Positions 1,003 to 41,270 of a stretch of 51,510 nt of DNA are shown here, piece after piece. The number at the start of each line of letters is the position of its first letter. The first letter of the stretch is position 1. The stretch is from Octopus bimaculoides. Its lineage: Eukaryota. The DNA lies in assembly GCF_001194135.2 (NCBI RefSeq), contig NC_068981.1, positions 72,108,142 to 72,159,651 on the forward strand, in the 5' to 3' direction. The position numbers and the translations under genes were made by a program. The notes beneath the pieces were generated by a model, which had not been told where the DNA came from, did not search any database, and saw only the letters and a program-made list of their open reading frames with translations.

Positions 1003-1166
1003 TTATTCTTTTCTACTCTTGGCACAAGGCCCGAAATTTTGGGGGAGGGGGCCAGTGGATTAGATCGACCCAGTACGCAACTGGTACTTAATTTATCGAC
1101 CTCGAAAGGATGAAAGGAAAAGTCGACCTCAGCGGAATTTGAACTCAGAACGTAAAGACAGGCGAA
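1003..1166 (-). mobile_element. SINE family 1 (tRNA-headed), body lacking its 5' head
   Basis: Minus strand reads ttcgcctgtctttacgttctgagttcaaattccgctgaggtcgacttttcctttcatcctttcgaggtcgataaattaagtacc...ccttgtgcc, with a B-box-like GAGTTCAAAT. It matches many other copies in the window. Confidence 0.9.
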
Positions 1167-1869
1167 CAGCTGCAAATAATCAGTTCTAGGGGTTGGTGTC
1201 TCCACCAACCATATCCGTTTCGTTATTATATTTTCATCAAGTTCTTTTATGCACTCGAAGCATCTTTCAGCACATTTCTCTGGCATTTTCACTCTTATTA
1301 TTTCTTCTAACCTCTCGACCCTTCTCTCCATCTGCTCGCAATTATCGTACTTTATCAAAACCCCCTTGTATTTCACATCTTTATCCGTTCTCTCCTCCTC
1401 TTCTTGTACATTATTAGTTTCTGGCTTTTTTTATCTCTTTTTTGTTTTCTGTTGACTTATTTTTCCTTCGCTTTTTAGGGTTAGTAGCTCCATTTTCGTT
1501 CTTCTCATTTGTTTTCTCTGTTTCACACTTCTGTCTCTCTTTTATTTCCTCAATGTGGTCTACAATTTTTTCCTCCTCTGCTTGTGCTTTCTCTTGCTGT
1601 GGCTGTGTGAACTCGACTACGACATTTAACGTTTTCTCGTCCTCCACTTATATCTGGTAGGGAATTCTTTCTATGTTCTCGAATGTGGCAAAAAGCCACA
1701 TTTCGAGTCCAAATCCCACCATTTGCACACTTGATTTCGCCACTGGTCCCAATTCCGGCTCCTCCTTGGTTGCAGCCAACGCTGTTGCAACCAACCACTC
1801 TGGTTTAAGTTCTGGTGTAACTCTGGGAATTCGTATTTTCAAACTTCTTCCTCTATAGCTTGGTAGCAA
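1167..1869 (-). pseudogene. Element B: 5'- and 3'-deleted copy of the ORF1 (gag-like) retroelement at 8331-9962
   Basis: Near-identical to about 8859-9667 (e.g. KPEWLVATALAATKEEPELGPVAKSSVQMVGFGLEMWLF). It has a TAA at 1648-1650, a homopolymer frameshift near 1406-1412 and several internal deletions. Confidence 0.92.
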
Positions 1870-2081: not shown

Positions 2082-2447
2082 GTGGAGGCGCAATGGCCCA
2101 GTGGTCATAGGATCGCGGTTTCGATTCCCAGACCGGGCATTGTGAGTGTTTATTGAGCGAAAACACTTAAAGCTCCACGAGGCTCCGGTAGGGGATAGTG
2201 GCGAACCCTGCTGTACTCTTTCACCACAACTTTCTCTCACTCTTACTTCCTGTTTCTGTTGTGCCTGTAATTCAAAGGGTCAGCCTTGTCACGCTGTTTC
2301 ACGCTGAATATCCCCGAGAATTACGTTAAGGGTACACGTGTCTGTGGAGTGCTCAGCCACTTGCACGTTAATTTCACGAACAGGCTGTTCCGTTGATCGG
2401 ATCAACTGGAACCCTCGACGTCGTAAGCGACGGAGTGCCAGCAACAA
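2082..2447 (+). mobile_element. SINE family 2 (tRNA-derived head, CAA-type tail)
   Basis: Starts gtggaggcgcaatggcccagtgg (A-box-like), has ggtttcgattccc (B-box-like) and ends ggagtgccagcaacaa. Matches the copies at 12299-12591 and 28426-28807. Confidence 0.9.
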
Positions 2448-8277: not shown

Positions 8278-8330
8278 AAGCGGCGAGTTGGCAGAATCGT
8301 TAGCACGCCGGTCGAACTGCTTCGCGGTAT
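8278..8330 (+). mobile_element. SINE family 1 head, left part of a SINE split by two insertions
   Basis: aagcggcgagttggcagaatcgttagcacgccggtcgaactgcttcgcggtat. The body resumes at 11744. Confidence 0.9.
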
Positions 8331-9962
8331 AACGGCTCTGTGAATTATTGTGAATACTGTTGTGTTACTTTGTGAAAACTGTCTCGGTAAATAATTGTGA
8401 TTTTTGTGGAATTATTACGGTTACGTTTCACGTGAGCTGCTACATTTTCCCCAGCTATGGCAAGTGGTAGTGTCGCCAGTATGGAGAGCTATACCAAGGC
8501 CACTGTGGTGAGGAAGCCAGTGCCGCTAGAAACCAAGTTAATCAAGTTGGATATGGAGGAGGTGACCAGAAGCAGGAATTTGATAGAAGTTGAGGGAGAC
8601 TCATAAAAATTGTGTACCCCAAAAGAAACTAAAGAAAATAAAATTCTGAGGACAGTAGTGTATGGTACACAGGCTGTCGAAACCTGTAAAATTGAAATGG
8701 TGACGGAAGAGGAAATCGAGGAGTGCCTGGGTGAAATTGTCAATGAAGCCACGTACATCAACAGAGGAAGAAAGTTTGGTACGGTTGAGGTGAGGTTCGC
8801 CACTATAGAAGAGGCAACCAAGCATGCGACCAACATTTTAAGAAGTGAAAAAATAGCATTGCTACCAAGTTATAGAGGAAGAAGTGGTGTGAAAATACGA
8901 ATTCCTAAAGTTACACCAGATATTAAACCAGAGTGGTTGGTTGCAACAGTGCTGGCTGCAACCAAGGAGGAGCCGGAATTGGGACCAGTGGCGAAATCAA
9001 GTGTGCAAATGGTGGGATTTGGACTCGAAATGTGGCTTTTTGCCACACTCGAGGACATAGAAAGAATTCCCTACCAGATAGAAGTGGAGGACGAGAAAAC
9101 GTTAAATGTCGCAGTCGAGGGAAGGAAACCAAATTGTTACATATGCGGGGAGAGAGGTCATATGAAGACCAAATGCCCCCTATATGAGTTCACACAGCCA
9201 CAGCAAGAGAAAGCACAAGCAGAGGAGGAAAAAATTGTAGACCACACTGAGGAAATAAAAGAGAGACAGAAGTGTGAAACAGAGAAAACAAAGGAGAAGA
9301 ACGAAAATGGAGCTACTAACCCTAAAAAGCGAAGGAAAAATAAGTCTAAAGAACGGTCAACGGAAAACAAAGAGATAAAAAAGCCAGAAACTAATAATGT
9401 ACAAGAAGAGGAGGCGAGAACGGATAAAGATGTGAAATACAAGGGGGTTTTGATAAAGTACGAGAATTGCGAGCAGATGGAGAGAAAAGTCGAGAGGTTA
9501 AAAGAAATAATAAGAGTGAAAATGCCAGAGAAATGTGCTGAAAAATGCATTTTGATACGTGAGGAAAGATGCTTCGAGTGCATAAAAGAACTTGGTGAAA
9601 ATATAATAACGAAACGGATATGGTTGGTGGAGACACCACCCACTAGAACTGATTATTTGCAGTTGTTAAGGACGGACGTAACAATGATTAATGGAAGAAA
9701 GGTAAGGCGAGTGTTTGAAGTTTTTGAGTTAGAAAACCGTTAAAATGTTTACATGACGTTGAACGTAAAAGTGAAAAACTGGATAAATGTAACCACCCGA
9801 CTTTGGGGATCGAGTGGACATTGCGCCTCATTTTTTTCATTCTTGCATATTATCATTTTATTTTAGTTACCCCGATTTTATGCTTGCGTTTTGTACTGTC
9901 TTTATGTTTTGTGATGTCTTAAAAAAATTCTTTGTATAGCCCTTCATGGGTAGTAAAGAAAT
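8331..9962 (+). mobile_element. Element A: 1.63-kb ORF1-only Tx1/L1-like non-LTR retroelement
   Basis: Flanked by a cggtat direct repeat (8325-8330, 9963-9968). Contains a single gag-like ORF and a roughly 220-nt 3' UTR ending gcccttcatgggtagtaaagaaat. No RT or endonuclease coding capacity and no assembly gap inside. Confidence 0.85.
8457..9743 (+). pseudogene. ORF1 / gag-like nucleic-acid-binding protein (RRM-like region, CX2CX4HX4C knuckle, charged linker, C-terminal domain), 428 codons with one in-frame stop
   Basis: ATG at 8457 is in frame with the 8610-9743 ORF, with a single TAA at 8604-8606. Knuckle CYICGERGHMKTKC at 9135-9176. RRM-like segment KFGTVEVRFATIEEA. Confidence 0.85.
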
Positions 9963-9975
9963 CGGTATTTCGTCT

Positions 9976-11743
9976 CCGTGAGTTTACTAGTCGGACGTGT
10001 TATTACTCGCTGCGATTTTTTTTTAGTATAACGCCACTATTGTTTGGTGGGCGTTGCTGAGATGGAGAAAATGAAGACGTATGCAGCAGCGACGGGGAGT
10101 CGAGCTTCCGTCGTCCCAGGTCTGCTGAAGCAATATGAAATACATTGGAATGAAGACATGGCTGAGAAAATTGAAAAATGTAAAGAAATGATAAAGAAGG
10201 AGGGGCCAAACATAAAGTTGACCCCATCAGAGGAGGAAAAGACGAAAATGGAAATTGGAGTTGTGGAATATAAATCCTTTTCAAGGAAAAATAAAAGCAT
10301 AGACAATGCAACGAAGGAGGAGGTGGAAAAGTGTTTGAAGGAATTGCAAGAAGATGTCTTTTTTTACTAGAGGCAAGACATACGCATCTGTAGAAATAAC
10401 ATATGTATCGGAGGAGGCAGCAAAAAAAAAAAAATACGCCAATAAAACACTCGCCAAAGGAAATTGGATGCTCTTTCCCAATAAGTTGGGTAGACGTCCA
10501 ACGTGGATTAGAGTGGGTAGGATCCCACCGAAAATAGAGTTGGAATGGGTAATGGCAGCAGTTTTTCATGAAAGAGAAGGAGAAGATGTAAGGATAATTA
10601 TGATAAGCAGAACCCAACAAATAAATTGTTGGGGATATGGATTGAATGTGCTTTTTATAGCAAGTCAGAAAGTTTACAGTGACATACCAGAGATACTGGA
10701 ACTGCCTAACGAGTACAAACTGGACATAATGTTGGAGGGGAGACTTCCAAAGCGCTACGAATGTGGCAAAAGAGGTCACATTAGAAGAAGGTGCCCAGAA
10801 ATAATGGAAAACAAAGAAATGGAAACGCAAGAAGGCGTGATAGAGGAGAGGAAACAGTTACAGGAAGAGGAGCAGAGAGCTGATTTTGAGGAAGCTAAAT
10901 CAAGGAAGTGAGAAAGGAGGAGCTCATCGCCGAAAGTCGAACAAGGGAAAAAAATGCAAATCGTGGGATCACTGAGGAAAGAATATAACAGCAGCAGAAC
11001 ATTACCACAGAACCATACAATCTCACAATCGCACAGACAGACAGATAGATACACAGATGCATAAACACACAGGCATACATACACTCGGAAGCGAAGAAAA
11101 TAACGCAGAGTTGCAGAAACCTAAAAGCACAGAACCTGAAAACACAGACACACAAACACAACATGCAGACTTAGTCACACAAACATGCAGAACCACAGAC
11201 AGATAAACACACATATAGTCACAAAGAAATATAGAAGAACAGACACATGGTAGTACAGAATCACAAAAACAAAAAAAGAACAGACGCAGGAGGTACATAG
11301 GAACGGCATATATTTGATGTCATATCGATACACACAAAAAATAGAGAAGATATCCAAAATAAAAGACATTGTCAAAGTGGACCTCTCGGACCGTTGCGAT
11401 AAGGAGGCGAGATGGATTTTAATNNNNNNNNNNTCCCGAGGTGAATTTCGAACCCAGTGCTCCAGTGGTGAACTACGATGAAATAAAAGATTATATAAAA
11501 TGGTGAGTAGTTTTATTTTGGATAAATTATTGAGATAATTTTGAAAAGAACTATCGAAGACTGTGAAAGGAACTACTAAGAACTGTTGAAATAATTGAAA
11601 TAACGCGCTGCTCTGGGGTGGGGCTGGGTGGCCGTCCCATCATCATTGTTTAATTTCATTGTTCCATTCTATCATGTGTTAATTGTCCCCGCATGTGTGT
11701 ATTGTCCCATCTGTGTTTAGCCCCTTGTGAGTAATAAAGAAAT
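9976..11743 (+). mobile_element. Element C: diverged second ORF1-type element of the same family
   Basis: TSD cggtatttcgtct (9963-9975) / tggtatttcgtct (11744-11756). The 3' end gccccttgtgagtaataaagaaat resembles that of element A. Contains a 10-N gap at 11424-11433. Confidence 0.82.
10062..11423 (+). pseudogene. Disrupted ORF1 homolog of element A
   Basis: TKEEVEKCLKEL..TRGKTYASVEITY..IRVGRIPPKIELEWVMAAV..EGRLPKRYECGKRGHIRRRC aligns with A (TEEEIEECLGEI..NRGRKFGTVEVRF..IRIPKVTPDIKPEWLVATV..EGRKPNCYICGERGHMKTKC). Frameshift at the T-run near 10359-10365 and stops in the linker. Confidence 0.82.
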
Positions 11744-11910
11744 TGGTATTTCGTCTGTCGTCGCATTCTGAGAACAAATTCCGCTGAGGTCAACTTTGAC
11801 TTTCATCCTTTCGGGGCCGATAAAATAAGTACTTGTGAAACAGTGGAGTCGATGTAATCGACATACCCACTTCCTCGAAATTGCTGGCCTTGTGCTAAAA
11901 TTTGGAACCA
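11744..11910 (+). mobile_element. SINE family 1 body, right part of the split SINE
   Basis: tggtatttcgtctgtcgtcgcattctgagaacaaattccgctgaggtcaactttgactttcatcctttcggggccgataaaataagtac...ccttgtgctaaaatttggaacca. Confidence 0.9.
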
Positions 11911-12298
11911 TTATTTATAACAATTAACTAGCAGGAGCTGTGGAAATTGCATGTTTATAAATGTTCTTTTTTGCATTTTAATGAATAACAATACTTCATG
12001 ACTTAAAAATTTCGATTGTACTTACTATTTCGTGCCGAAGAAAGTGCAAATTGTGAAGGCAAATTCAACATCAGTGAGATTTGAACTCAGAACATAAATG
12101 TTCCTAACCCAACACAGTAAAGCATTTAATGTTGCCGCTTCATAAAAATTTCAAATATTCGTACAAGGTAACAAATTGCAAGAGAGATCTCAGTCAATCT
12201 CACTTTTTCATAATTATTTTTATGGATGCACTGATGACAAGCAAAATCGGATAGGACGGAAAGTGAATTCAGATTGCAAAGGGTTGTAAATGAATACT

Positions 12299-12591
12299 TG
12301 TTGGCACTCCGTCGCTTACGACGTCGAGGGTTCCAGTTGATCCGATCAACGGAACAGCCTGCTCGTGAAATTAACGTGCAAGTGGCTGAGCACTCCACAG
12401 ACACGTGTACCCTTAACGTAGTTCTCGGGGATATTCAGCATGACACAGTGTGACAAGGCTGACCCTTTGAATTACAGGCACAACAGAAACAGGAAGTAAG
12501 AGAAAGTTGTGGTGAAAGAGTACAGCAGGGTTCGCCACTATCGCCTGCCGGAGCCTCGTGGAGCTTTAGGTGCTTTCGCTCAATAAACACT
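12299..12591 (-). mobile_element. SINE family 2, 5' part lost in an assembly gap
   Basis: Reverse complement of about 2150-2445, high identity. Confidence 0.9.
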
Positions 12592-16403: not shown

Positions 16404-17270
16404 ATGCCATGTACAAAAGAAGCTTTTGAAGTGCCTGAATTTCAAAGAGGCCGTATTATGGGTCATTTTGAAAGTGGACATAGGCAGTGTAAAATCGCAG
16501 AAAACCTTGGGCTCCTGCTTTCTATAGTTAATAGAGTGATTGCGCAATTCACCAGAGAAGAAGAGTCCACGTCTACGCGCTCAGCTCAACCAGAGCCCTC
16601 TGACAGGACCCTTCTCTTTGTTAAGAGAAGTGTGGAGGCTAATCCTCGTTGCAAGACCTTTAACCTAACAGTACAAGTTGATGTCAGTCCCAGAACAGCT
16701 GTCAGGTATCCCCACAGACTTGGTTACTATGGCAGAGCAGCAAGAAGGAAGTCACTTCTTCGACCAGCCAACACCAGGCGGAGAAAAGATTGGGCCAGTG
16801 AGATGGTGGAGAAGCCAGTAGCATTTTGGAACACTGTCATATTCTCTGATAAGTTCAGATTTGCTGCATTTCCTGACAATGGTCGAGTGTGGGTCTGGAA
16901 ACTCTGTGATCAAGAATTTAATGAGAAAAGATTGCAGTCAGGAATGAAACACGGCAACTATTCTGTGATGACCTGGAGAGCAATTTAGAGCAATGGTTAA
17001 TTAGAACTGGGGGAGTATGAGGGAAACATAGACTCGGATAAATATGTGTCCATATTGCAGAAAGGACTCCTTCTAATCTTCTCCAGTGGTGTGAAATGAT
17101 TAAAGAAGACTCTTTATTAATGGAAGATAGAGCTCCTTGTCGCACGGCTAAAATGACCCAAGATTTGTTGGATGAGAATGGCATTAAAAAGCTTCCATGG
17201 CCAAGCCAGTCACCACATATGAAACCTATTGAACACATCTGAGATATAACGGACAGGACACTTCATTAAA
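16404..17270 (+). pseudogene. Tc1-like transposase, disrupted
   Basis: EFQRGRIMG HTH start, WNTVIFSDK (first D), SVMTW, EDRAPC (QDNAPC-like), and WPSQSP.MKPIEHI near 17198-17240. Stop at 16986-16988. Confidence 0.85.
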
Positions 17271-28425: not shown

Positions 28426-28807
28426 TGTTGGCACACCGTCGGCTATGACGTAGAGGGTTCCAGTTGATCCGATCAACGGAACAGCCTGCTTGTGAAATTA
28501 ACGTGCAAGTGGCTGAGCACTCCACAGACACGTGTACCCTTAACGTAGTTCTCGAGGATATTCAGCGTGACACAGTGTGACAAGGCTGACCCTTTGAATT
28601 ACAGGCACAACAGAAACAAGAAGTAAGAGTGAGAGAAAGTTGTGGTGAAAGAGTACACCAGGGTTCGCCACCATCCGCTGCCGGAGCCTTGTGGAGCTTT
28701 AGGTGTTTTCGCTCAATAAACACTCACAACACCCGGTCTAGGAATCGAAAACGCGATCCTATGACCGCGAGTCCGCTGCCCTAACCACTGGGCCATTGCG
28801 CCTCCAC
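28426..28807 (-). mobile_element. SINE family 2, full length
   Basis: Minus strand: gtggaggcgcaatggcccagtggttagggcagcggactcgcggtcataggatcgcgttttcgattcc, a tRNA-like head. Confidence 0.92.
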
Positions 28808-29499: not shown

Positions 29500-30867
29500 T
29501 AAATAGTTCTATGCATGTTTTTCATTGAACATTCTCACTAAAGCTTCAACATCTTTGTTGACCTCGAAAATTTCCGTTAGTATAATAAATCACTGCACCT
29601 AAATAATCGAGTAAAATGCAGCTGGAAAACCGCACTTGCTTGACTGGAGTCAAATAGCACGCACATCGCGATCCGTGAAAGTACATGTGGCTTTCTTGCT
29701 ACGTCTTGTCTACAGTCCTTTTACGCCGCTTTTCTATTAATTACTCCAAAATAGTCATAACGTGTGTCCATTGTGCCATACCAGTCACCCACTAGCATTA
29801 AGGGATTGAACATCCCCATGAATGCTTAAGTCTTCAGAATATCATCTAGTCTGAGGATGCCACATTCACTGCTGTTCTTCTCCAGGTCTTATCATGGCAC
29901 GAAATCAAAATAATCTCAAAACAATGTTGCAATACTGCTCGATCTAAGTCATCTACAAGAGACGTACACCTCATTAACGCTTAAAAGTAGTGCGACTTAC
30001 TGCGTGGCGGCACCCTTGGCTTCGCTAATGGCTACTATATCTATATTTACTAACTTGAGGTCGTTAACGAAGAAAACATGTTTCCAGGCCGACTTCAGGT
30101 CTCGTGCATTTAGGCCATGTTGAGCGGAAAAATGTTGAGTGCAACAGTTTACTTGCCTTGCCCTAGAAAAAGAATGATTCGGTACTATAAGTAGAAGGGT
30201 TCTTGAGAACCCGCCAAAATTTCTTAGTTTTTTTTTTTAAATTACCTTATGCGGGTATTTTTACTGTAAATTCCAATAGACTTCTGGTATTGTTTGCACT
30301 AGAAATCTTTTGGCTGGTTTCTTTAGGATGACTTTCTAAAACCTTTTCTATTTTTTTTAAACACATCCACCAACAGGTTATTGTTTCTTCGTATGATAGT
30401 AAAAATGAAAACAAGTTTTTGAACGTTTGGCTGTTAGTGTTACTTCCATCGTTGTTCTTGTTCTAATTGTTTTCTTGTTTTGGTTGTTTTCTTTGTGGTA
30501 GCTTTGGTGGTGGGTTTTGTGATGTTTCGTCAAACCTTTCGGCTTTTAGTTTTGAGTAATTGTTATAGTTTTTTTTTCTTCCTCTTCGTCTCACCACAAC
30601 TTCTTGCCATAGTCACTTATTTTTGTCCTTTTCACCTGACGAAGTGTTGGAGGCGATGTTGGAGTGCAGGTATGTGCATAAACCGAAACAACGAAAACCA
30701 CCTGTTGTCCTTCTACCACAGTTCTCATTTGTCCATCATTAATTTAAATAAATAAACTCAAGGACCCTCACGAGATTCTCTGAAGTTCCGACCAATTCTA
30801 GTCGGAGATCGATCTGGATTCAATTATCTTCTCATGTTTCTCCAGCATGATTGCTAGGAAACTCACG
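29500..30867 (-). mobile_element. Element F: decayed Tx1/L1-like element with ORF1 remnant and APE endonuclease of ORF2
   Basis: Minus strand LNARDLKSAWKHVFFVNDLKLVNIDIVAISEAK (30113-30015) and LMLVGDWYGTMD (about 29801-29766). A K/T/N-rich linker and a possible degenerate VVEG...knuckle lie near 30725-30660. The 5' end abuts a SINE head. The 3' limit is uncertain. Confidence 0.68.
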
Positions 30868-30940
30868 TAAGCAGTCGGAACAAATACCACAACGCATTTT
30901 TTTCCCCGACGATCTAATGCTTCTGCCAGCTTACCGCCTT
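30868..30940 (-). mobile_element. SINE family 1 head only
   Basis: Minus strand aaggcggtaagctggcagaagcattagatcgtcggggaaaaaaatgcgttgtggtatttgttccgac; no B-box or body follows. Confidence 0.8.
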
Positions 30941-39789: not shown

Positions 39790-41270
39790 TCGATACTGTC
39801 ACATACACTCCCTGGTTGATCTGCCGCGGCTCTCAGCGCAGGAGGCAGAGTGCTGTGAAGGGCCGATCGGCCGATCACAGCCGCGGAGGTAGAAGAGGCA
39901 CTATCGGGCTGCGTTGGGGGAAAGTCACCGGGTCTAGATGGTCTTTCCTACGAGTTTTATTGTAATCTGGTCGTCCTGGACGCGACACATAGAAGTGGTT
40001 GCGCCTTCAGACTGGTCCCAGATTGTGCCCCAAACGACATAGGGCAACCCGACTACTTCAGACGGCTAGAAACTTTCCTTGGAACGTCGCGTACGTTAGG
40101 TGACTTTAATACAATCCTAGATGCACGTGTGGATTGTGTTGGCTCAATTCCAAATAGAAAAGGGAATACTTCCCTCACTAACCTGCTCAGTCGCTTTCAA
40201 CTGGCTGACAGGTTTAGAATGGATCACCTGGATACTCCTACGTGGACATGGACCAACAGCTTCGGGTCTCCCAGATTCTACTTTGATAGAGTATTCATTA
40301 GGTTAGGTGGCAAATCTAGCGTTAGTTATCCACAATTCCAGATCGTCAGCTATACGGGTCACAAGTTTGTGATCTGCAAGCTTGACTTAGATAGATTTTG
40401 TAGATACGTCACTCCTGGTGCGCAAAGCCTACAATGACCAGATTAGAGAATTAGTGAAAAGGGCGTTAATAGAAGCCATCATCAATTACTGGTGCGCCCT
40501 AAAAAGAGCCATTAAATTTTGAGTCACGTAGATATAGCAAAGCTCTAGCATTAGAAAAGAATAGTATAGAATAAGACTTATTTAGCACACTAGAAGAGGC
40601 ACTAAAATCTGGCAATGTTTCTAACGTGCTGGCAGGGAGAGTAGCCCTAGACCAACACTTCAGTGCCAGGCAGAAGGTTGTATTGTCACAGCTAAGTTAC
40701 GTGCTATGAGACAAGAGGGAATCAACGTCGCGAGATGGACCCGCTTAGTTGAGACCCAACGTGGCAATAAAGCCATAATATGGTCTTTGGTCAACCAAAA
40801 TGGATGCACGGTGAACGAACTCGACAAAATGTGTAAGGTCCTCCACCAGTATTTCGCTGTTCGGGACGAGTGGTGGGCCAGATCGCGGGATGGCTTTCTC
40901 GTCCTTGAAATGGAGGGCGGAGGTAGCAAACGTGTTTATCGCATCCGTCATCACCTACCGCCTAACTGTTGTGCCTTGCCTAGATTCGTGTCTAGTCAAG
41001 CTGGAGCGCCTGCTTTTCGCTTTTTGTGGAGAAACAGAGGTCTACTGGTCAGACGCTCTATTTGCTGTCAAATGCCGCTAAATGGAGGGCTGGGCATGCC
41101 TTGGCTGAAAATGCGCAGACGTGCGATAAGGCTAAGACATCTCCTGTTCTACTTAGACGGTGAACAGGTGTGGTGGCCCTTCGTGAAACTCGTCTTCCCA
41201 CAGTTCAACTAATTTAATGAACTAAACTGGTGGAGCATGATTGCGAAATCGTGGGTTTGATTTCCAGACC
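39790..41270 (+). pseudogene. Element E: Tx1/L1-like ORF2 relic with rearranged segments
   Basis: KSPGLDGLSYEFY (39922-39960). APE motifs GDFN (40099-40110), WTWTN, FDRVF and SYTGHKFV. Tether KMCKVLHQYFA. Post-RT GGLGMP near 41084-41101. Confidence 0.85.

What the first reader, a model, noticed from the sequence alone, without database searches (positions are those of the whole stretch)
8278..11910. Two diverged retroelements inserted at the same nucleotide of one SINE: a SINE-targeting non-LTR system
Seen: the SINE head (8278-8330) and body (11744-11910) rejoin into one ordinary family-1 SINE if 8331-11749 is removed. Element C is bounded by cggtatttcgtct / tggtatttcgtct (13-bp TSD, 1 mismatch). 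Element A lies in the left copy of that TSD with cggtat / cggtat. Both 3' junctions read ...TAAAGAAAT|YGGTATTTCGTC, while the 5' junctions differ. Established: a fixed 3' junction with a variable 5' junction is typical of sequence-specific target-primed reverse transcription, and Tx1-clade elements target multicopy sequences (transposons, U2 snRNA, tRNA loci). Inference: this family uses an abundant SINE as a safe-haven target, cutting between the A- and B-box-like motifs and so probably inactivating the SINE's Pol III promoter. I do not know of a description of this for a mollusc SINE.
Basis: partly seen in the sequence, partly recalled or inferred. Interest (0 to 1): 0.88.

Follow-up and report, generated by a model that had tools for sequence, protein, structure and literature searches.

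The report
Octopus LINE family that targets a SINE
Two related octopus jumping genes inserted at exactly the same nucleotide of one short repeat (a SINE), and other copies in two octopus species use the same spot, so this retroelement family prefers that SINE site; this adds a new target to a known kind of site-specific element.

Summary
The window is Octopus bimaculoides. A SINE head (8278-8330) and body (11744-~11909) are split by two elements:
- A (8331-9962), flanked by CGGTAT.
- C (9976-11743), flanked by a 13-bp duplication matching at 12 of 13 positions.

Both 3' ends read ...TAAAGAAAT|YGGTATTTCGTC. GGTATTTCGTC belongs to the SINE consensus, not to the elements.

The same junction occurs in three further copies: one in O. 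bimaculoides (L003) and two in O. vulgaris (L002). One of these is a ~20-nt stub flanked by SINE head, SINE body and a ~22-nt duplication. Chance probability for these three of six outside 3' ends is about 6e-12. Host SINEs are no more alike than random copies, so the insertions were independent.

A and C carry only a CCHC-knuckle ORF1 (30% identical, E=3e-27). Full-length relatives encode an APE endonuclease, a reverse transcriptase and zf-RVT, and share the same ~40-nt 3' tail. An O. vulgaris SINE subfamily carries that tail too.

The best reading is a target-preferring APE-type LINE family of the L1/Tx1 group: a fixed first-strand nick in the SINE and a variable second nick. The preference is not exclusive, because other copies lie in tandem arrays or other flanks. 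Tx1 membership could not be tested. This is a new member of a known kind, of moderate interest.

The parts
8278..8330 (+). Head of the host SINE (profile positions about 1-45). An A-box-like motif TGGCAGAATCG lies at 8289-8299. The last 6 nt, CGGTAT (8325-8330), are the left copy of A's target-site duplication.
8331..9962 (+). Element A, an ORF1-only non-autonomous LINE derivative. 5'UTR 8331-8456; ORF1 8457-9743 with one in-frame TAA at 8604-8606; CCHC knuckle at about 9132-9179; 3'UTR 9744-9962; conserved tail ending GTAGTAAAGAAAT.
   Evidence: The same 1.6-kb ORF1-only architecture occurs in L003 at 84% identity.
9963..9975 (+). CGGTATTTCGTCT: SINE positions 40-52. This is the left copy of C's 13-bp target-site duplication. 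Its first 6 nt are the right copy of A's duplication.
9976..11743 (+). Element C, an older and more decayed ORF1-only relative. ORF1 remnants 10062-10911 (frameshift near 10354-10370; CCHC at about 10753-10797). ACA-rich degenerate linker 10912-11300. C-terminal domain remnants 11314-11423 and 11435-11506. 3'UTR and tail ending GTAATAAAGAAAT. The length is an estimate because of the gap.
   Evidence: (30% identity to A ORF1, E=3e-27)
11424..11433 (.). Assembly gap inside C's ORF1 C-terminal domain. The flanks are collinear with family homologues. The true length is unknown and is probably more than 10 nt.
11744..11909 (+). Body and family-1 tail of the host SINE (profile positions 40-204). 11744-11756 TGGTATTTCGTCT is the right copy of C's duplication. 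A degenerate B-box-like motif lies at 11770-11783.
1165..1869 (-). A2, a third copy of the A type, 90-94% identical in BLAST blocks. It is 5'-truncated at the position equivalent to A 8859. It lacks the 3'UTR and is joined directly to a different SINE copy.
1010..1166 (-). SINE body attached to A2. It starts at about profile position 47 (TCGCCTGTC...), 7 nt past the shared site. It is only 76% identical to the host of A and C, so it is a separate SINE copy.

Best explanation
A and C are two diverged, ORF1-only (non-autonomous) members of an octopus APE-type LINE family of the L1/Tx1 group.

Autonomous relatives encode ORF1 plus an ORF2 with an apurinic-type endonuclease, a reverse transcriptase and a C-terminal zinc finger. 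All members share a conserved ~40-nt 3' tail (...TCTNTGTTTAGCCCCTTGTGGGTAATAAAGAAAT). That tail is presumably what the reverse transcriptase recognises, so ORF1-only elements are copied in trans.

Proposed mechanism, by target-primed reverse transcription:
1. The first (bottom-strand) nick falls preferentially at one phosphodiester bond of an abundant SINE, between consensus positions 39 and 40 (...GCTTAG^CGGTATTTCGTC...).
2. cDNA synthesis starts exactly at the last T of the tail, without microhomology.
3. The second (top-strand) nick falls 6 to ~22 bp downstream. This gives target-site duplications of 6 (A), 13 (C) and ~22 bp (the L002 stub) and variable 5' junctions.

Order of events: C probably inserted first. 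A later hit the left copy of C's duplication, which still has the SINE head upstream.

What is shown: the junction anatomy, its recurrence in independent SINE copies of two species, the domain content, and the shared tail.

What is inferred: that the specificity lies in the endonuclease (possibly helped by read-through RNA), trans-mobilisation of the ORF1-only elements, and the order of insertion.
For: Anatomy and duplications.

The SINE consensus contains GCTTAGCGGTATTTCGTCTG, and 20 uninterrupted copies span the site in 191 kb.

Five exact junctions, tail|NGGTATTTCGTC, all in SINE sense orientation:
- window A
- window C
- L003 (O. bimaculoides CM046624, 84% copy of A)
- L002 13536 (O. vulgaris, 5'-truncated RT-bearing element)
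- L002 18728-18545 minus strand: SINE head + ~22-nt duplication + 20-nt tail stub + SINE body

Statistics: binomial chance of at least 5 of 8 is about 8e-20. For the loci outside the window alone, at least 3 of 6 is about 6e-12.

Independence: host SINE bodies are 76-80% identical to each other, as expected for unrelated copies each 85-89% from consensus. A versus A2 is 90-94%.

Homology and domains:
- A and C ORF1 are homologous, each with a CCHC knuckle.
- The full-length relative L005 has Exo_endo_phos, RVT_1 and zf-RVT.
- The RT is closest to human L1 ORF2p among solved structures.
- The tail is conserved across ORF2-bearing elements, ORF1-only elements and SINE copies.

Literature: Tx1-clade LINEs are known to target specific sites in other transposons and to give tandem insertions sandwiching a duplication (PMC4494074). 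L1-Tx1 families are recently active in O. vulgaris (PMC13282606).
Against: - The sample is small (8 family 3' ends) and the loci were chosen through ORF1 homologues, not at random.
- Three of the 8 ends are not at the site. L002 9449 abuts another element, L002 10927 an unrelated flank, and L002 17453 is 12 nt off.
- The related O. vulgaris/O. sinensis subfamily with AATAATAAAAT tails lies in tandem arrays with no SINE.
- Two O. vulgaris SINE copies that carry the same tail have non-SINE 3' flanks. If the same machinery moved them, the specificity is loose or specific to a subfamily.
- Only two events (window, L002 stub) show both the head and the body of the SINE. The L003 5' junction is lost in a gap.
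- No empty allele, no endonuclease assay and no RT phylogeny are available.
Confidence: 0.8

Rival explanations
1. Homology-guided rather than endonuclease-guided targeting. Master copies that sit in SINEs are transcribed past the AATAAA in their tail (6 nt from the element end). Their RNAs would then carry GGUAUUUCGUC... at the 3' end. This read-through segment would pair with nicked or broken SINE DNA and set the junction, as proposed for co-transcribed R1/R2-type elements. The endonuclease itself would have little specificity.
For: The poly(A) signal lies only 6 nt from the element end, so read-through into the SINE is expected. PMC4494074 notes that co-transcription with the target can strengthen target-specific integration. 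Non-SINE insertions exist, as expected if only some source copies sit in SINEs.
Against: There is no poly(A) or other extra sequence at any exact junction. The nick position is identical to the nucleotide in five events, while the duplications vary, which fits a protein-defined first nick. The two models are not mutually exclusive and cannot be separated from sequence alone.
Confidence: 0.12
2. Composite propagation. One ancestral element landed in a SINE once. The unit 'element + SINE body' was then retrotransposed as a whole through the SINE's own 3' tail. The repeated junction would be inherited, not re-created.
For: A2 is 5'-truncated and has no SINE head upstream. L003 and L002 13536 lack a demonstrable head. 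3' transduction is common in LINEs.
Against: - The window locus and the L002 stub have SINE head, duplication and body.
- A carries only 13 nt of SINE before C begins.
- Host SINE bodies are as diverged from each other (76-80%) as random SINE pairs, while A and A2 are 90-94% identical.
- The hosts belong to different SINE subfamilies: the family-1 tail in O. bimaculoides and the LINE-type tail in O. vulgaris.
- The duplication lengths differ (6, 13 and ~22 bp).
Confidence: 0.05
3. Coincidence or artefact: SINE abundance, a fragile site in the SINE, gene conversion between SINE copies, or misassembly at repeats.
For: SINEs make up 11.6% of the O. vulgaris genome (PMC13282606). The window assembly is full of gaps, one of them inside C.
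Against: - The chance probability is about 1e-11 or less, even when the window is excluded.
- The same junction occurs in three assemblies, including the chromosome-level O. vulgaris assembly (GCA_951406725.2; the stretches read here contain no N).
- A's two junctions and C's 5' junction lie in gap-free sequence.
- The differing duplication lengths exclude copying of a single event.
Confidence: 0.03

Closest known systems
Tx1L in Tx1D (Xenopus), and crocodilian Tx1-Mar / SINEU-3 in Mariner-N4_AMi (Kojima 2015, PMC4494074)
   Same: These are APE-type LINEs, with dependent short elements, that insert at one defined site of another interspersed repeat. Tandem insertions 'sandwiching a TSD' are typical, exactly like A-[13 bp]-C here. 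ORF1 has a CCHC motif, and ORF2 has APE + RT + a C-terminal zinc finger.
   Different: The target here is a SINE (a retroposon with Pol III-type boxes), not a DNA transposon or an LTR element. The inserted copies in the window are ORF1-only. Clade membership was not tested by phylogeny.
Small-RNA-gene-targeting LINEs: Keno and Utopia (U2 snRNA) and others (PMC4640811; Kojima and Fujiwara 2004, as cited in PMC4494074). That Mutsu targets 5S rRNA genes and Dewa is a further Tx1-clade target-specific family is from my own recall, not read in the papers here.
   Same: They make sequence-specific insertions within a short, multicopy unit of the kind that carries a Pol II or Pol III small-RNA promoter. 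They follow the safe-haven logic and show a fixed junction.
   Different: Those targets are functional host genes kept by selection. The target here is itself a selfish, decaying repeat, present in far more copies and dispersed through the genome.
R2/R1 rDNA elements
   Same: They show a fixed 3' junction set by the first-strand nick and variable 5' junctions. Reverse transcription starts precisely at the 3'UTR end without poly(A). Very short abortive (5'-truncated) copies occur.
   Different: R2 uses a restriction-like endonuclease and a single ORF. Its target is rDNA.
Dictyostelium TRE/DRE and yeast Ty3, which target tRNA genes (PMC5006619)
   Same: They are associated with Pol III-type promoter units.
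   Different: Those insert at set distances outside tRNA genes by binding Pol III factors. Here the insertion is inside the SINE at a fixed nucleotide, which points to DNA sequence recognition.
HAL1 'half-L1' ORF1-only elements of mammals (from my own knowledge: Bao and Jurka 2010; not checked here)
   Same: They are multicopy LINE derivatives that keep ORF1 and the 3' end but lack ORF2, so they depend on ORF2 supplied in trans.
   Different: They belong to a different LINE lineage with a poly(A) tail, and no target specificity has been reported.

Membership tests
Non-LTR (LINE) retrotransposon, APE type | Reverse transcriptase of the non-LTR type | tested here: met
   RVT_1 E=8e-31 in the L005 ORF2. 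The L002 RT is closest to human L1 ORF2p, E=4e-23. The RT is present in relatives that share the tail, not in A or C themselves.
Non-LTR (LINE) retrotransposon, APE type | N-terminal apurinic/apyrimidinic-type endonuclease | tested here: met
   Exo_endo_phos E=1.9e-15 at residues 10-228 of the L005 ORF2.
Non-LTR (LINE) retrotransposon, APE type | Hallmarks of target-primed reverse transcription: variable-length target-site duplications, 5' truncation, no LTRs | tested here: met
   Duplications of 6, 13 and ~22 bp. 5'-truncated copies: A2, L002 7255-9449, 9450-10927, and the 20-nt stub.
Tx1 clade | RT-domain phylogeny placing the element with Tx1 reference families (RTclass1/Repbase) | not testable with these tools
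   No Tx1, Keno, Kibi or other reference sequences were available. Database homologues are unnamed cephalopod and echinoderm RTs at 52% identity or less.
Tx1 clade | ORF1 with RRM plus CCHC zinc knuckle | tested here: inconclusive
   zf-CCHC is found in A (E=2.4e-4) and weakly in C (E=5.8e-3). Pfam detects no RRM.
Tx1 clade | ORF2 = APE + RT + C-terminal zinc-binding domain | tested here: met
   Exo_endo_phos, RVT_1 and zf-RVT (E=5e-9) are all found. This architecture is shared by the whole L1 group, so it is not specific to Tx1.
Target-specific LINE (operational criterion of PMC4494074: the same sequence in more than 20% of flanks) | The same sequence flanks a large fraction of copies at the same position | tested here: met
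   5 of 8 family 3' ends with ...AAAGAAAT tails abut SINE position 40, and 2 more lie within 12 nt. The sample is small and not random.
tRNA-derived SINE (SINE2), for the host repeat | Detectable tRNA-related head | tested here: not met
   Rfam finds no tRNA match at E<=1 on three intact copies. ARAGORN finds none. Only A-box-like and B-box-like motifs are seen by eye (consensus). tRNA-derived octopus SINEs are reported by Ohshima and Okada 1994, cited in PMC3531059.
SINE with a partner-LINE tail | The 3' tail is shared with a LINE | tested here: met
   O. vulgaris SINE copies L002 13539-13706 and 17465-18318 end in the same ~41-nt tail, 93% identical to C's tail. This was not seen for the family-1 host SINE in the window.
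ORF1-only non-autonomous LINE derivative (HAL1-like) | Several copies with ORF1 and the 3' end but no ORF2 | tested here: met
   A, the L003 copy (collinear over 1.6 kb at 84%), C, and the 1.78-kb units in L001, L006 and L007.

The most novel reading that the evidence does not exclude
The LINE family and the SINE may form a closed loop. The LINE's reverse transcriptase would amplify a SINE subfamily through the shared 3' tail. The growing population of SINE copies would in turn supply the precise landing site for the LINE and its ORF1-only parasites. In that case the LINE would manufacture its own safe havens.
Probability: 0.3. Interest if true: 0.75.

Novelty: new member of a known kind. Interest (0 to 1): 0.5.

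Why it matters
Site-specific LINEs are models for how endonucleases read DNA, and they are starting points for targeted gene insertion. Almost all known targets are host multicopy genes, microsatellites or DNA/LTR transposons.

A LINE that lands at one nucleotide of a SINE, a repeat class that makes up about a tenth of the octopus genome, would have a very large number of neutral landing sites. That would explain how it and its ORF1-only dependants persist at low cost to the host.

The finding also affects repeat annotation in cephalopod genomes, where split SINEs and nested or tandem elements need to be recognised. It also gives a concrete LINE-SINE partner pair to test.

In the papers I could search, I found no description of a SINE as a specific LINE target. 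Repbase entries could not be checked.

Tried and rejected
- **Element consensus versus SINE.** I tested whether GGTATTTCGTC is part of the element consensus. It is not: 20 uninterrupted SINE copies carry it next to the head.
- **tRNA origin of the SINE.** Rfam (E<=1) and ARAGORN found nothing.
- **More O. bimaculoides copies.** Look-ups of P0001, P0002 and P0003 were not on record. Only L003 was obtained.
- **RT search for close octopus relatives or named Tx1 proteins.** Hits were at most 52% identical, unnamed or uninformatively named. No clade assignment was possible.
- **Tandem Repeats Finder on L001.** It returned nothing because the period exceeds 500. The arrays were found by BLAST instead.
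- **3'-tail hairpin.** Only a 3-bp CCC/GGG stem with one compensatory change was found. That is too weak to claim a structure.
- **SINE body as the elements' own 3' end.** Rejected, because A is followed by only 13 nt of SINE, because the head and duplications are present, and because the B-box-like motif lies in the 'body'.
- **Inverted segmental duplication linking A2 and A/C through the 2090-2444 / 12298-12591 repeat.** Rejected, because the order of parts differs.
- **Gap continuity.** Only weak homology evidence was obtained. No second copy of C exists in the data.
Full report
**Source and anatomy**

ORF1 homologues identify the window as Octopus bimaculoides.
- A SINE head, 8278-8330, ends in CGGTAT.
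- Element A, 8331-9962, ends GTAGTAAAGAAAT.
- Thirteen nucleotides, CGGTATTTCGTCT (9963-9975), follow.
- Element C, 9976-11743, ends GTAATAAAGAAAT.
- TGGTATTTCGTCT (11744-11756) then runs on into the SINE body up to about 11909.

A is therefore flanked by a perfect 6-bp repeat and C by a 13-bp repeat matching at 12 of 13 positions. Both 3' junctions fall at the same nucleotide.

I built a profile from 40 SINE copies in the window and seven fetched octopus loci. It matches 8286-8336 as positions 1-51 and 11744-11908 as positions 40-204. Head plus body therefore make one ordinary SINE, with the overlap equal to the duplication. A possible duplication of the SINE itself (TTATTTTTAATA / TTATTTATAACA, 10 of 12, AT-rich) flanks the whole structure.

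**The assembly gap (11424-11433)**

No second copy of C exists in any sequence I could reach, so continuity is unproven.
- The left flank encodes a peptide (QKIEKISKIKDIVKVDLSDRCDKEAR) that aligns with the start of the family's ORF1 C-terminal domain (hhalign E=9e-4, probability only 23%).
- The right flank, 11435-11506, encodes PEVNFEPSAPVVNYDEIKDYIKW*. This resembles the C-terminal end of a relative (E=0.02). The family 3'UTR and tail follow it.
- The flanks are therefore collinear and correctly ordered.
- They are out of frame for a 10-nt gap. Relatives have 24-60 residues between the two segments, so the gap probably hides more than 10 nt.
- C's frame is already broken upstream.
- A's two junctions and C's 5' junction lie in uninterrupted sequence. 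The finding therefore does not depend on the gap, apart from C's length and the assumption that 9976 and 11743 bound one insertion. The 13-bp duplication supports that assumption.

**What A and C are**

A has a 126-nt 5'UTR, an ORF of 428 codons with a single in-frame stop (8604-8606), a CCHC knuckle (Pfam E=2.4e-4) and a 219-nt 3'UTR. It has no ORF2.

C encodes a homologous but frameshifted protein (30% identity over 244 residues, E=3e-27).

The ORF1-only layout is heritable, not a one-off deletion.
- A copy in another O. bimaculoides chromosome (L003) is collinear with A over 1.6 kb at 84% identity.
- O. vulgaris has 1.78-kb ORF1-only units.

Full-length relatives exist.
- L005 (O. vulgaris) has ORF1 followed by a 1132-residue ORF2 with Exo_endo_phos, RVT_1 and zf-RVT.
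- The RT is closest to human L1 ORF2p among solved structures.

All of these share a ~40-nt 3' tail. This is an APE-type LINE family of the L1/Tx1 group with ORF1-only dependants. Tx1-clade membership needs reference sequences that I did not have.

**Is the SINE site a real preference?**

The consensus of uninterrupted SINEs reads ...AATGCTTAGCGGTATTTCGTCTG..., so the motif is target sequence, not element sequence.

Beyond A and C, I found three more exact junctions.
- L003, O. bimaculoides...GTAACAAAGAAAT|CGGTATTTCGTCCG plus SINE body. Its 5' side is lost in a gap.
- L002 13536, O. vulgaris: a 5'-truncated RT-bearing element...AATAAAGAAAT|TCGTATTTCGTCTGCCG.
- L002 18728-18545, minus strand: a complete SINE in which a 20-nt remnant of the tail (TTGTGGTTAGTGAAGAAAT) sits at the same bond. 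A ~22-nt duplication of SINE positions 40-61 flanks it. This is an abortive insertion with both the head and the body present.

Two cases are imprecise.
- L002 17453 has the tail, then 12 nt, then the SINE from position 42.
- A2 (window 1165-1869, minus strand) is a 5'-truncated copy of A. Its 3'UTR and the first 7 nt of the SINE segment are missing.

All cases are in SINE sense orientation. With 26 sites in 191 kb, the chance of at least 5 of 8 junctions at this bond is about 8e-20. For the loci outside the window alone, at least 3 of 6 gives about 6e-12.

The host SINE bodies are 76-80% identical to one another. That is what unrelated copies at 85-89% from consensus should show. A and A2 are 90-94% identical. 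The O. bimaculoides hosts carry one SINE tail and the O. vulgaris hosts another. These are therefore independent hits on different SINE copies, not a propagated composite.

**Mechanism**

In target-primed reverse transcription the 3' junction marks the first (bottom-strand) nick.
- That nick is fixed between SINE positions 39 and 40.
- The second nick varies (6, 13 and ~22 bp downstream). This explains the constant 3' junctions and the variable 5' junctions.
- There is no microhomology between the tail end and the primer strand, and no poly(A). Initiation therefore looks protein-positioned, as in R2-type elements.
- The AATAAA 6 nt from the element end means that transcripts of SINE-resident copies will read into the SINE. 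RNA-target pairing may reinforce the precision; I list this as a rival or adjunct.

C is more decayed, and its duplication has a mismatch. C therefore probably inserted first, and A later re-used the left copy of the duplication, which retains the SINE head. Kojima reports 'tandem insertions sandwiching a TSD' for Tx1-Mar/SINEU-3 (PMC4494074), and the A-C arrangement matches that pattern.

**Limits**

- The preference is not absolute. L002 9449 abuts a 5'-truncated ORF1 element, and L002 10927 has an unrelated flank.
- A sister subfamily in O. vulgaris and O. sinensis, with AATAATAAAAT tails, forms head-to-tail arrays without any SINE.
- The sample is small, and the loci were found through ORF1 homologues.
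- The 'promoter inactivation' idea is of little weight, because the host SINE is already degenerate.

**An extra point**

O. vulgaris has SINE copies with the same head and body that end in the LINE's own tail, 93% identical to C's tail over 41 nt. This LINE family is therefore a candidate partner of a subfamily of the very SINE it targets. Two such SINE copies have non-SINE 3' flanks, so the link between mobilisation and targeting remains open.

**Comparison and novelty**

- Target-specific APE LINEs of the Tx1 clade are known to hit DNA transposons, LTR elements, snRNA genes, 5S rRNA genes and microsatellites (PMC4494074, PMC4640811).
- L1-Tx1 families are recently active in O. vulgaris (PMC13282606).
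- My searches found no report of a SINE as a specific LINE target. Repbase notes could not be checked.

I rate this a new member of a known kind. It is real and well supported, and of moderate interest (0.5).

Noticed in passing
L001 4270-18505; L006 9300-14645; L007 1-12856 (O. vulgaris): ORF1-only relatives form head-to-tail tandem arrays of 3 to 8 or more units, with a period of about 1780 bp. Many units keep intact 379-380-aa ORFs. Units abut as tail|CAC(A/G)TG..GGAAAT.., with a variable 10-25-nt 5' segment and no SINE. L001 and L006 share the same left flank, and L001, L006 and L007 share the same right flank, so whole arrays were duplicated as blocks.
   Followed up: partly
L005 9708-14985 (O. 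vulgaris OX597840); L004 9759-13332 (O. sinensis): L005 holds a full-length autonomous relative: ORF1 plus a 1132-aa ORF2 with APE, RT and zf-RVT. It is itself repeated in tandem with a period of 5277 bp. O. sinensis has a version with an internally deleted ORF2, repeated with a period of 3572 bp.
   Followed up: partly
L002 13539-13706, 17465-18318, 18728-18470(-): An O. vulgaris SINE subfamily has the same head and body as the host SINE. After position ~168 it ends in the LINE family's 3' tail (...TGTTTAGCCCCTTGTGGGTAATAAAGAAAT). It is a candidate LINE-SINE partner pair.
   Followed up: partly
L002 17453-18340: A 5'-truncated SINE that starts at position ~42 is flanked by ATATAGATTAG on both sides. 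It sits exactly at the 3' end of a resident ORF1-type element. It was then amplified into four tandem units of about 225 bp with (AT)n spacers.
   Followed up: partly
L002 7255-13536: Three family elements lie head to tail with no target sequence between them: a 5'-truncated ORF2 element, a 5'-truncated ORF1 element, and a second decayed ORF2 element. Only the last one abuts the SINE site. This suggests repeated use of one site.
   Followed up: no
window 2090-2444, 12298-12591, 28426-28779: Three copies of another, unrelated repeat family at 92-97% identity. Two of them lie within 400 bp of the A2 and A/C loci. The order of the parts rules out a segmental duplication.
   Followed up: partly
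window 39812-40858: A decayed ORF2 fragment of a related LINE, 42-63% amino-acid identity to the region upstream of the RT in L002. It is cut off by a microsatellite and gaps, so no 3' end is available.
   Followed up: partly
window 16404-16988: A 194-aa ORF that, by eye, looks like a fragment of a DNA-transposon (Tc1/mariner-like) transposase. No tool was run on it.
   Followed up: no
window 30860-30931 (-): The same SINE head (profile positions 1-70) continues into unrelated sequence. It may be another SINE family sharing the head.
   Followed up: no
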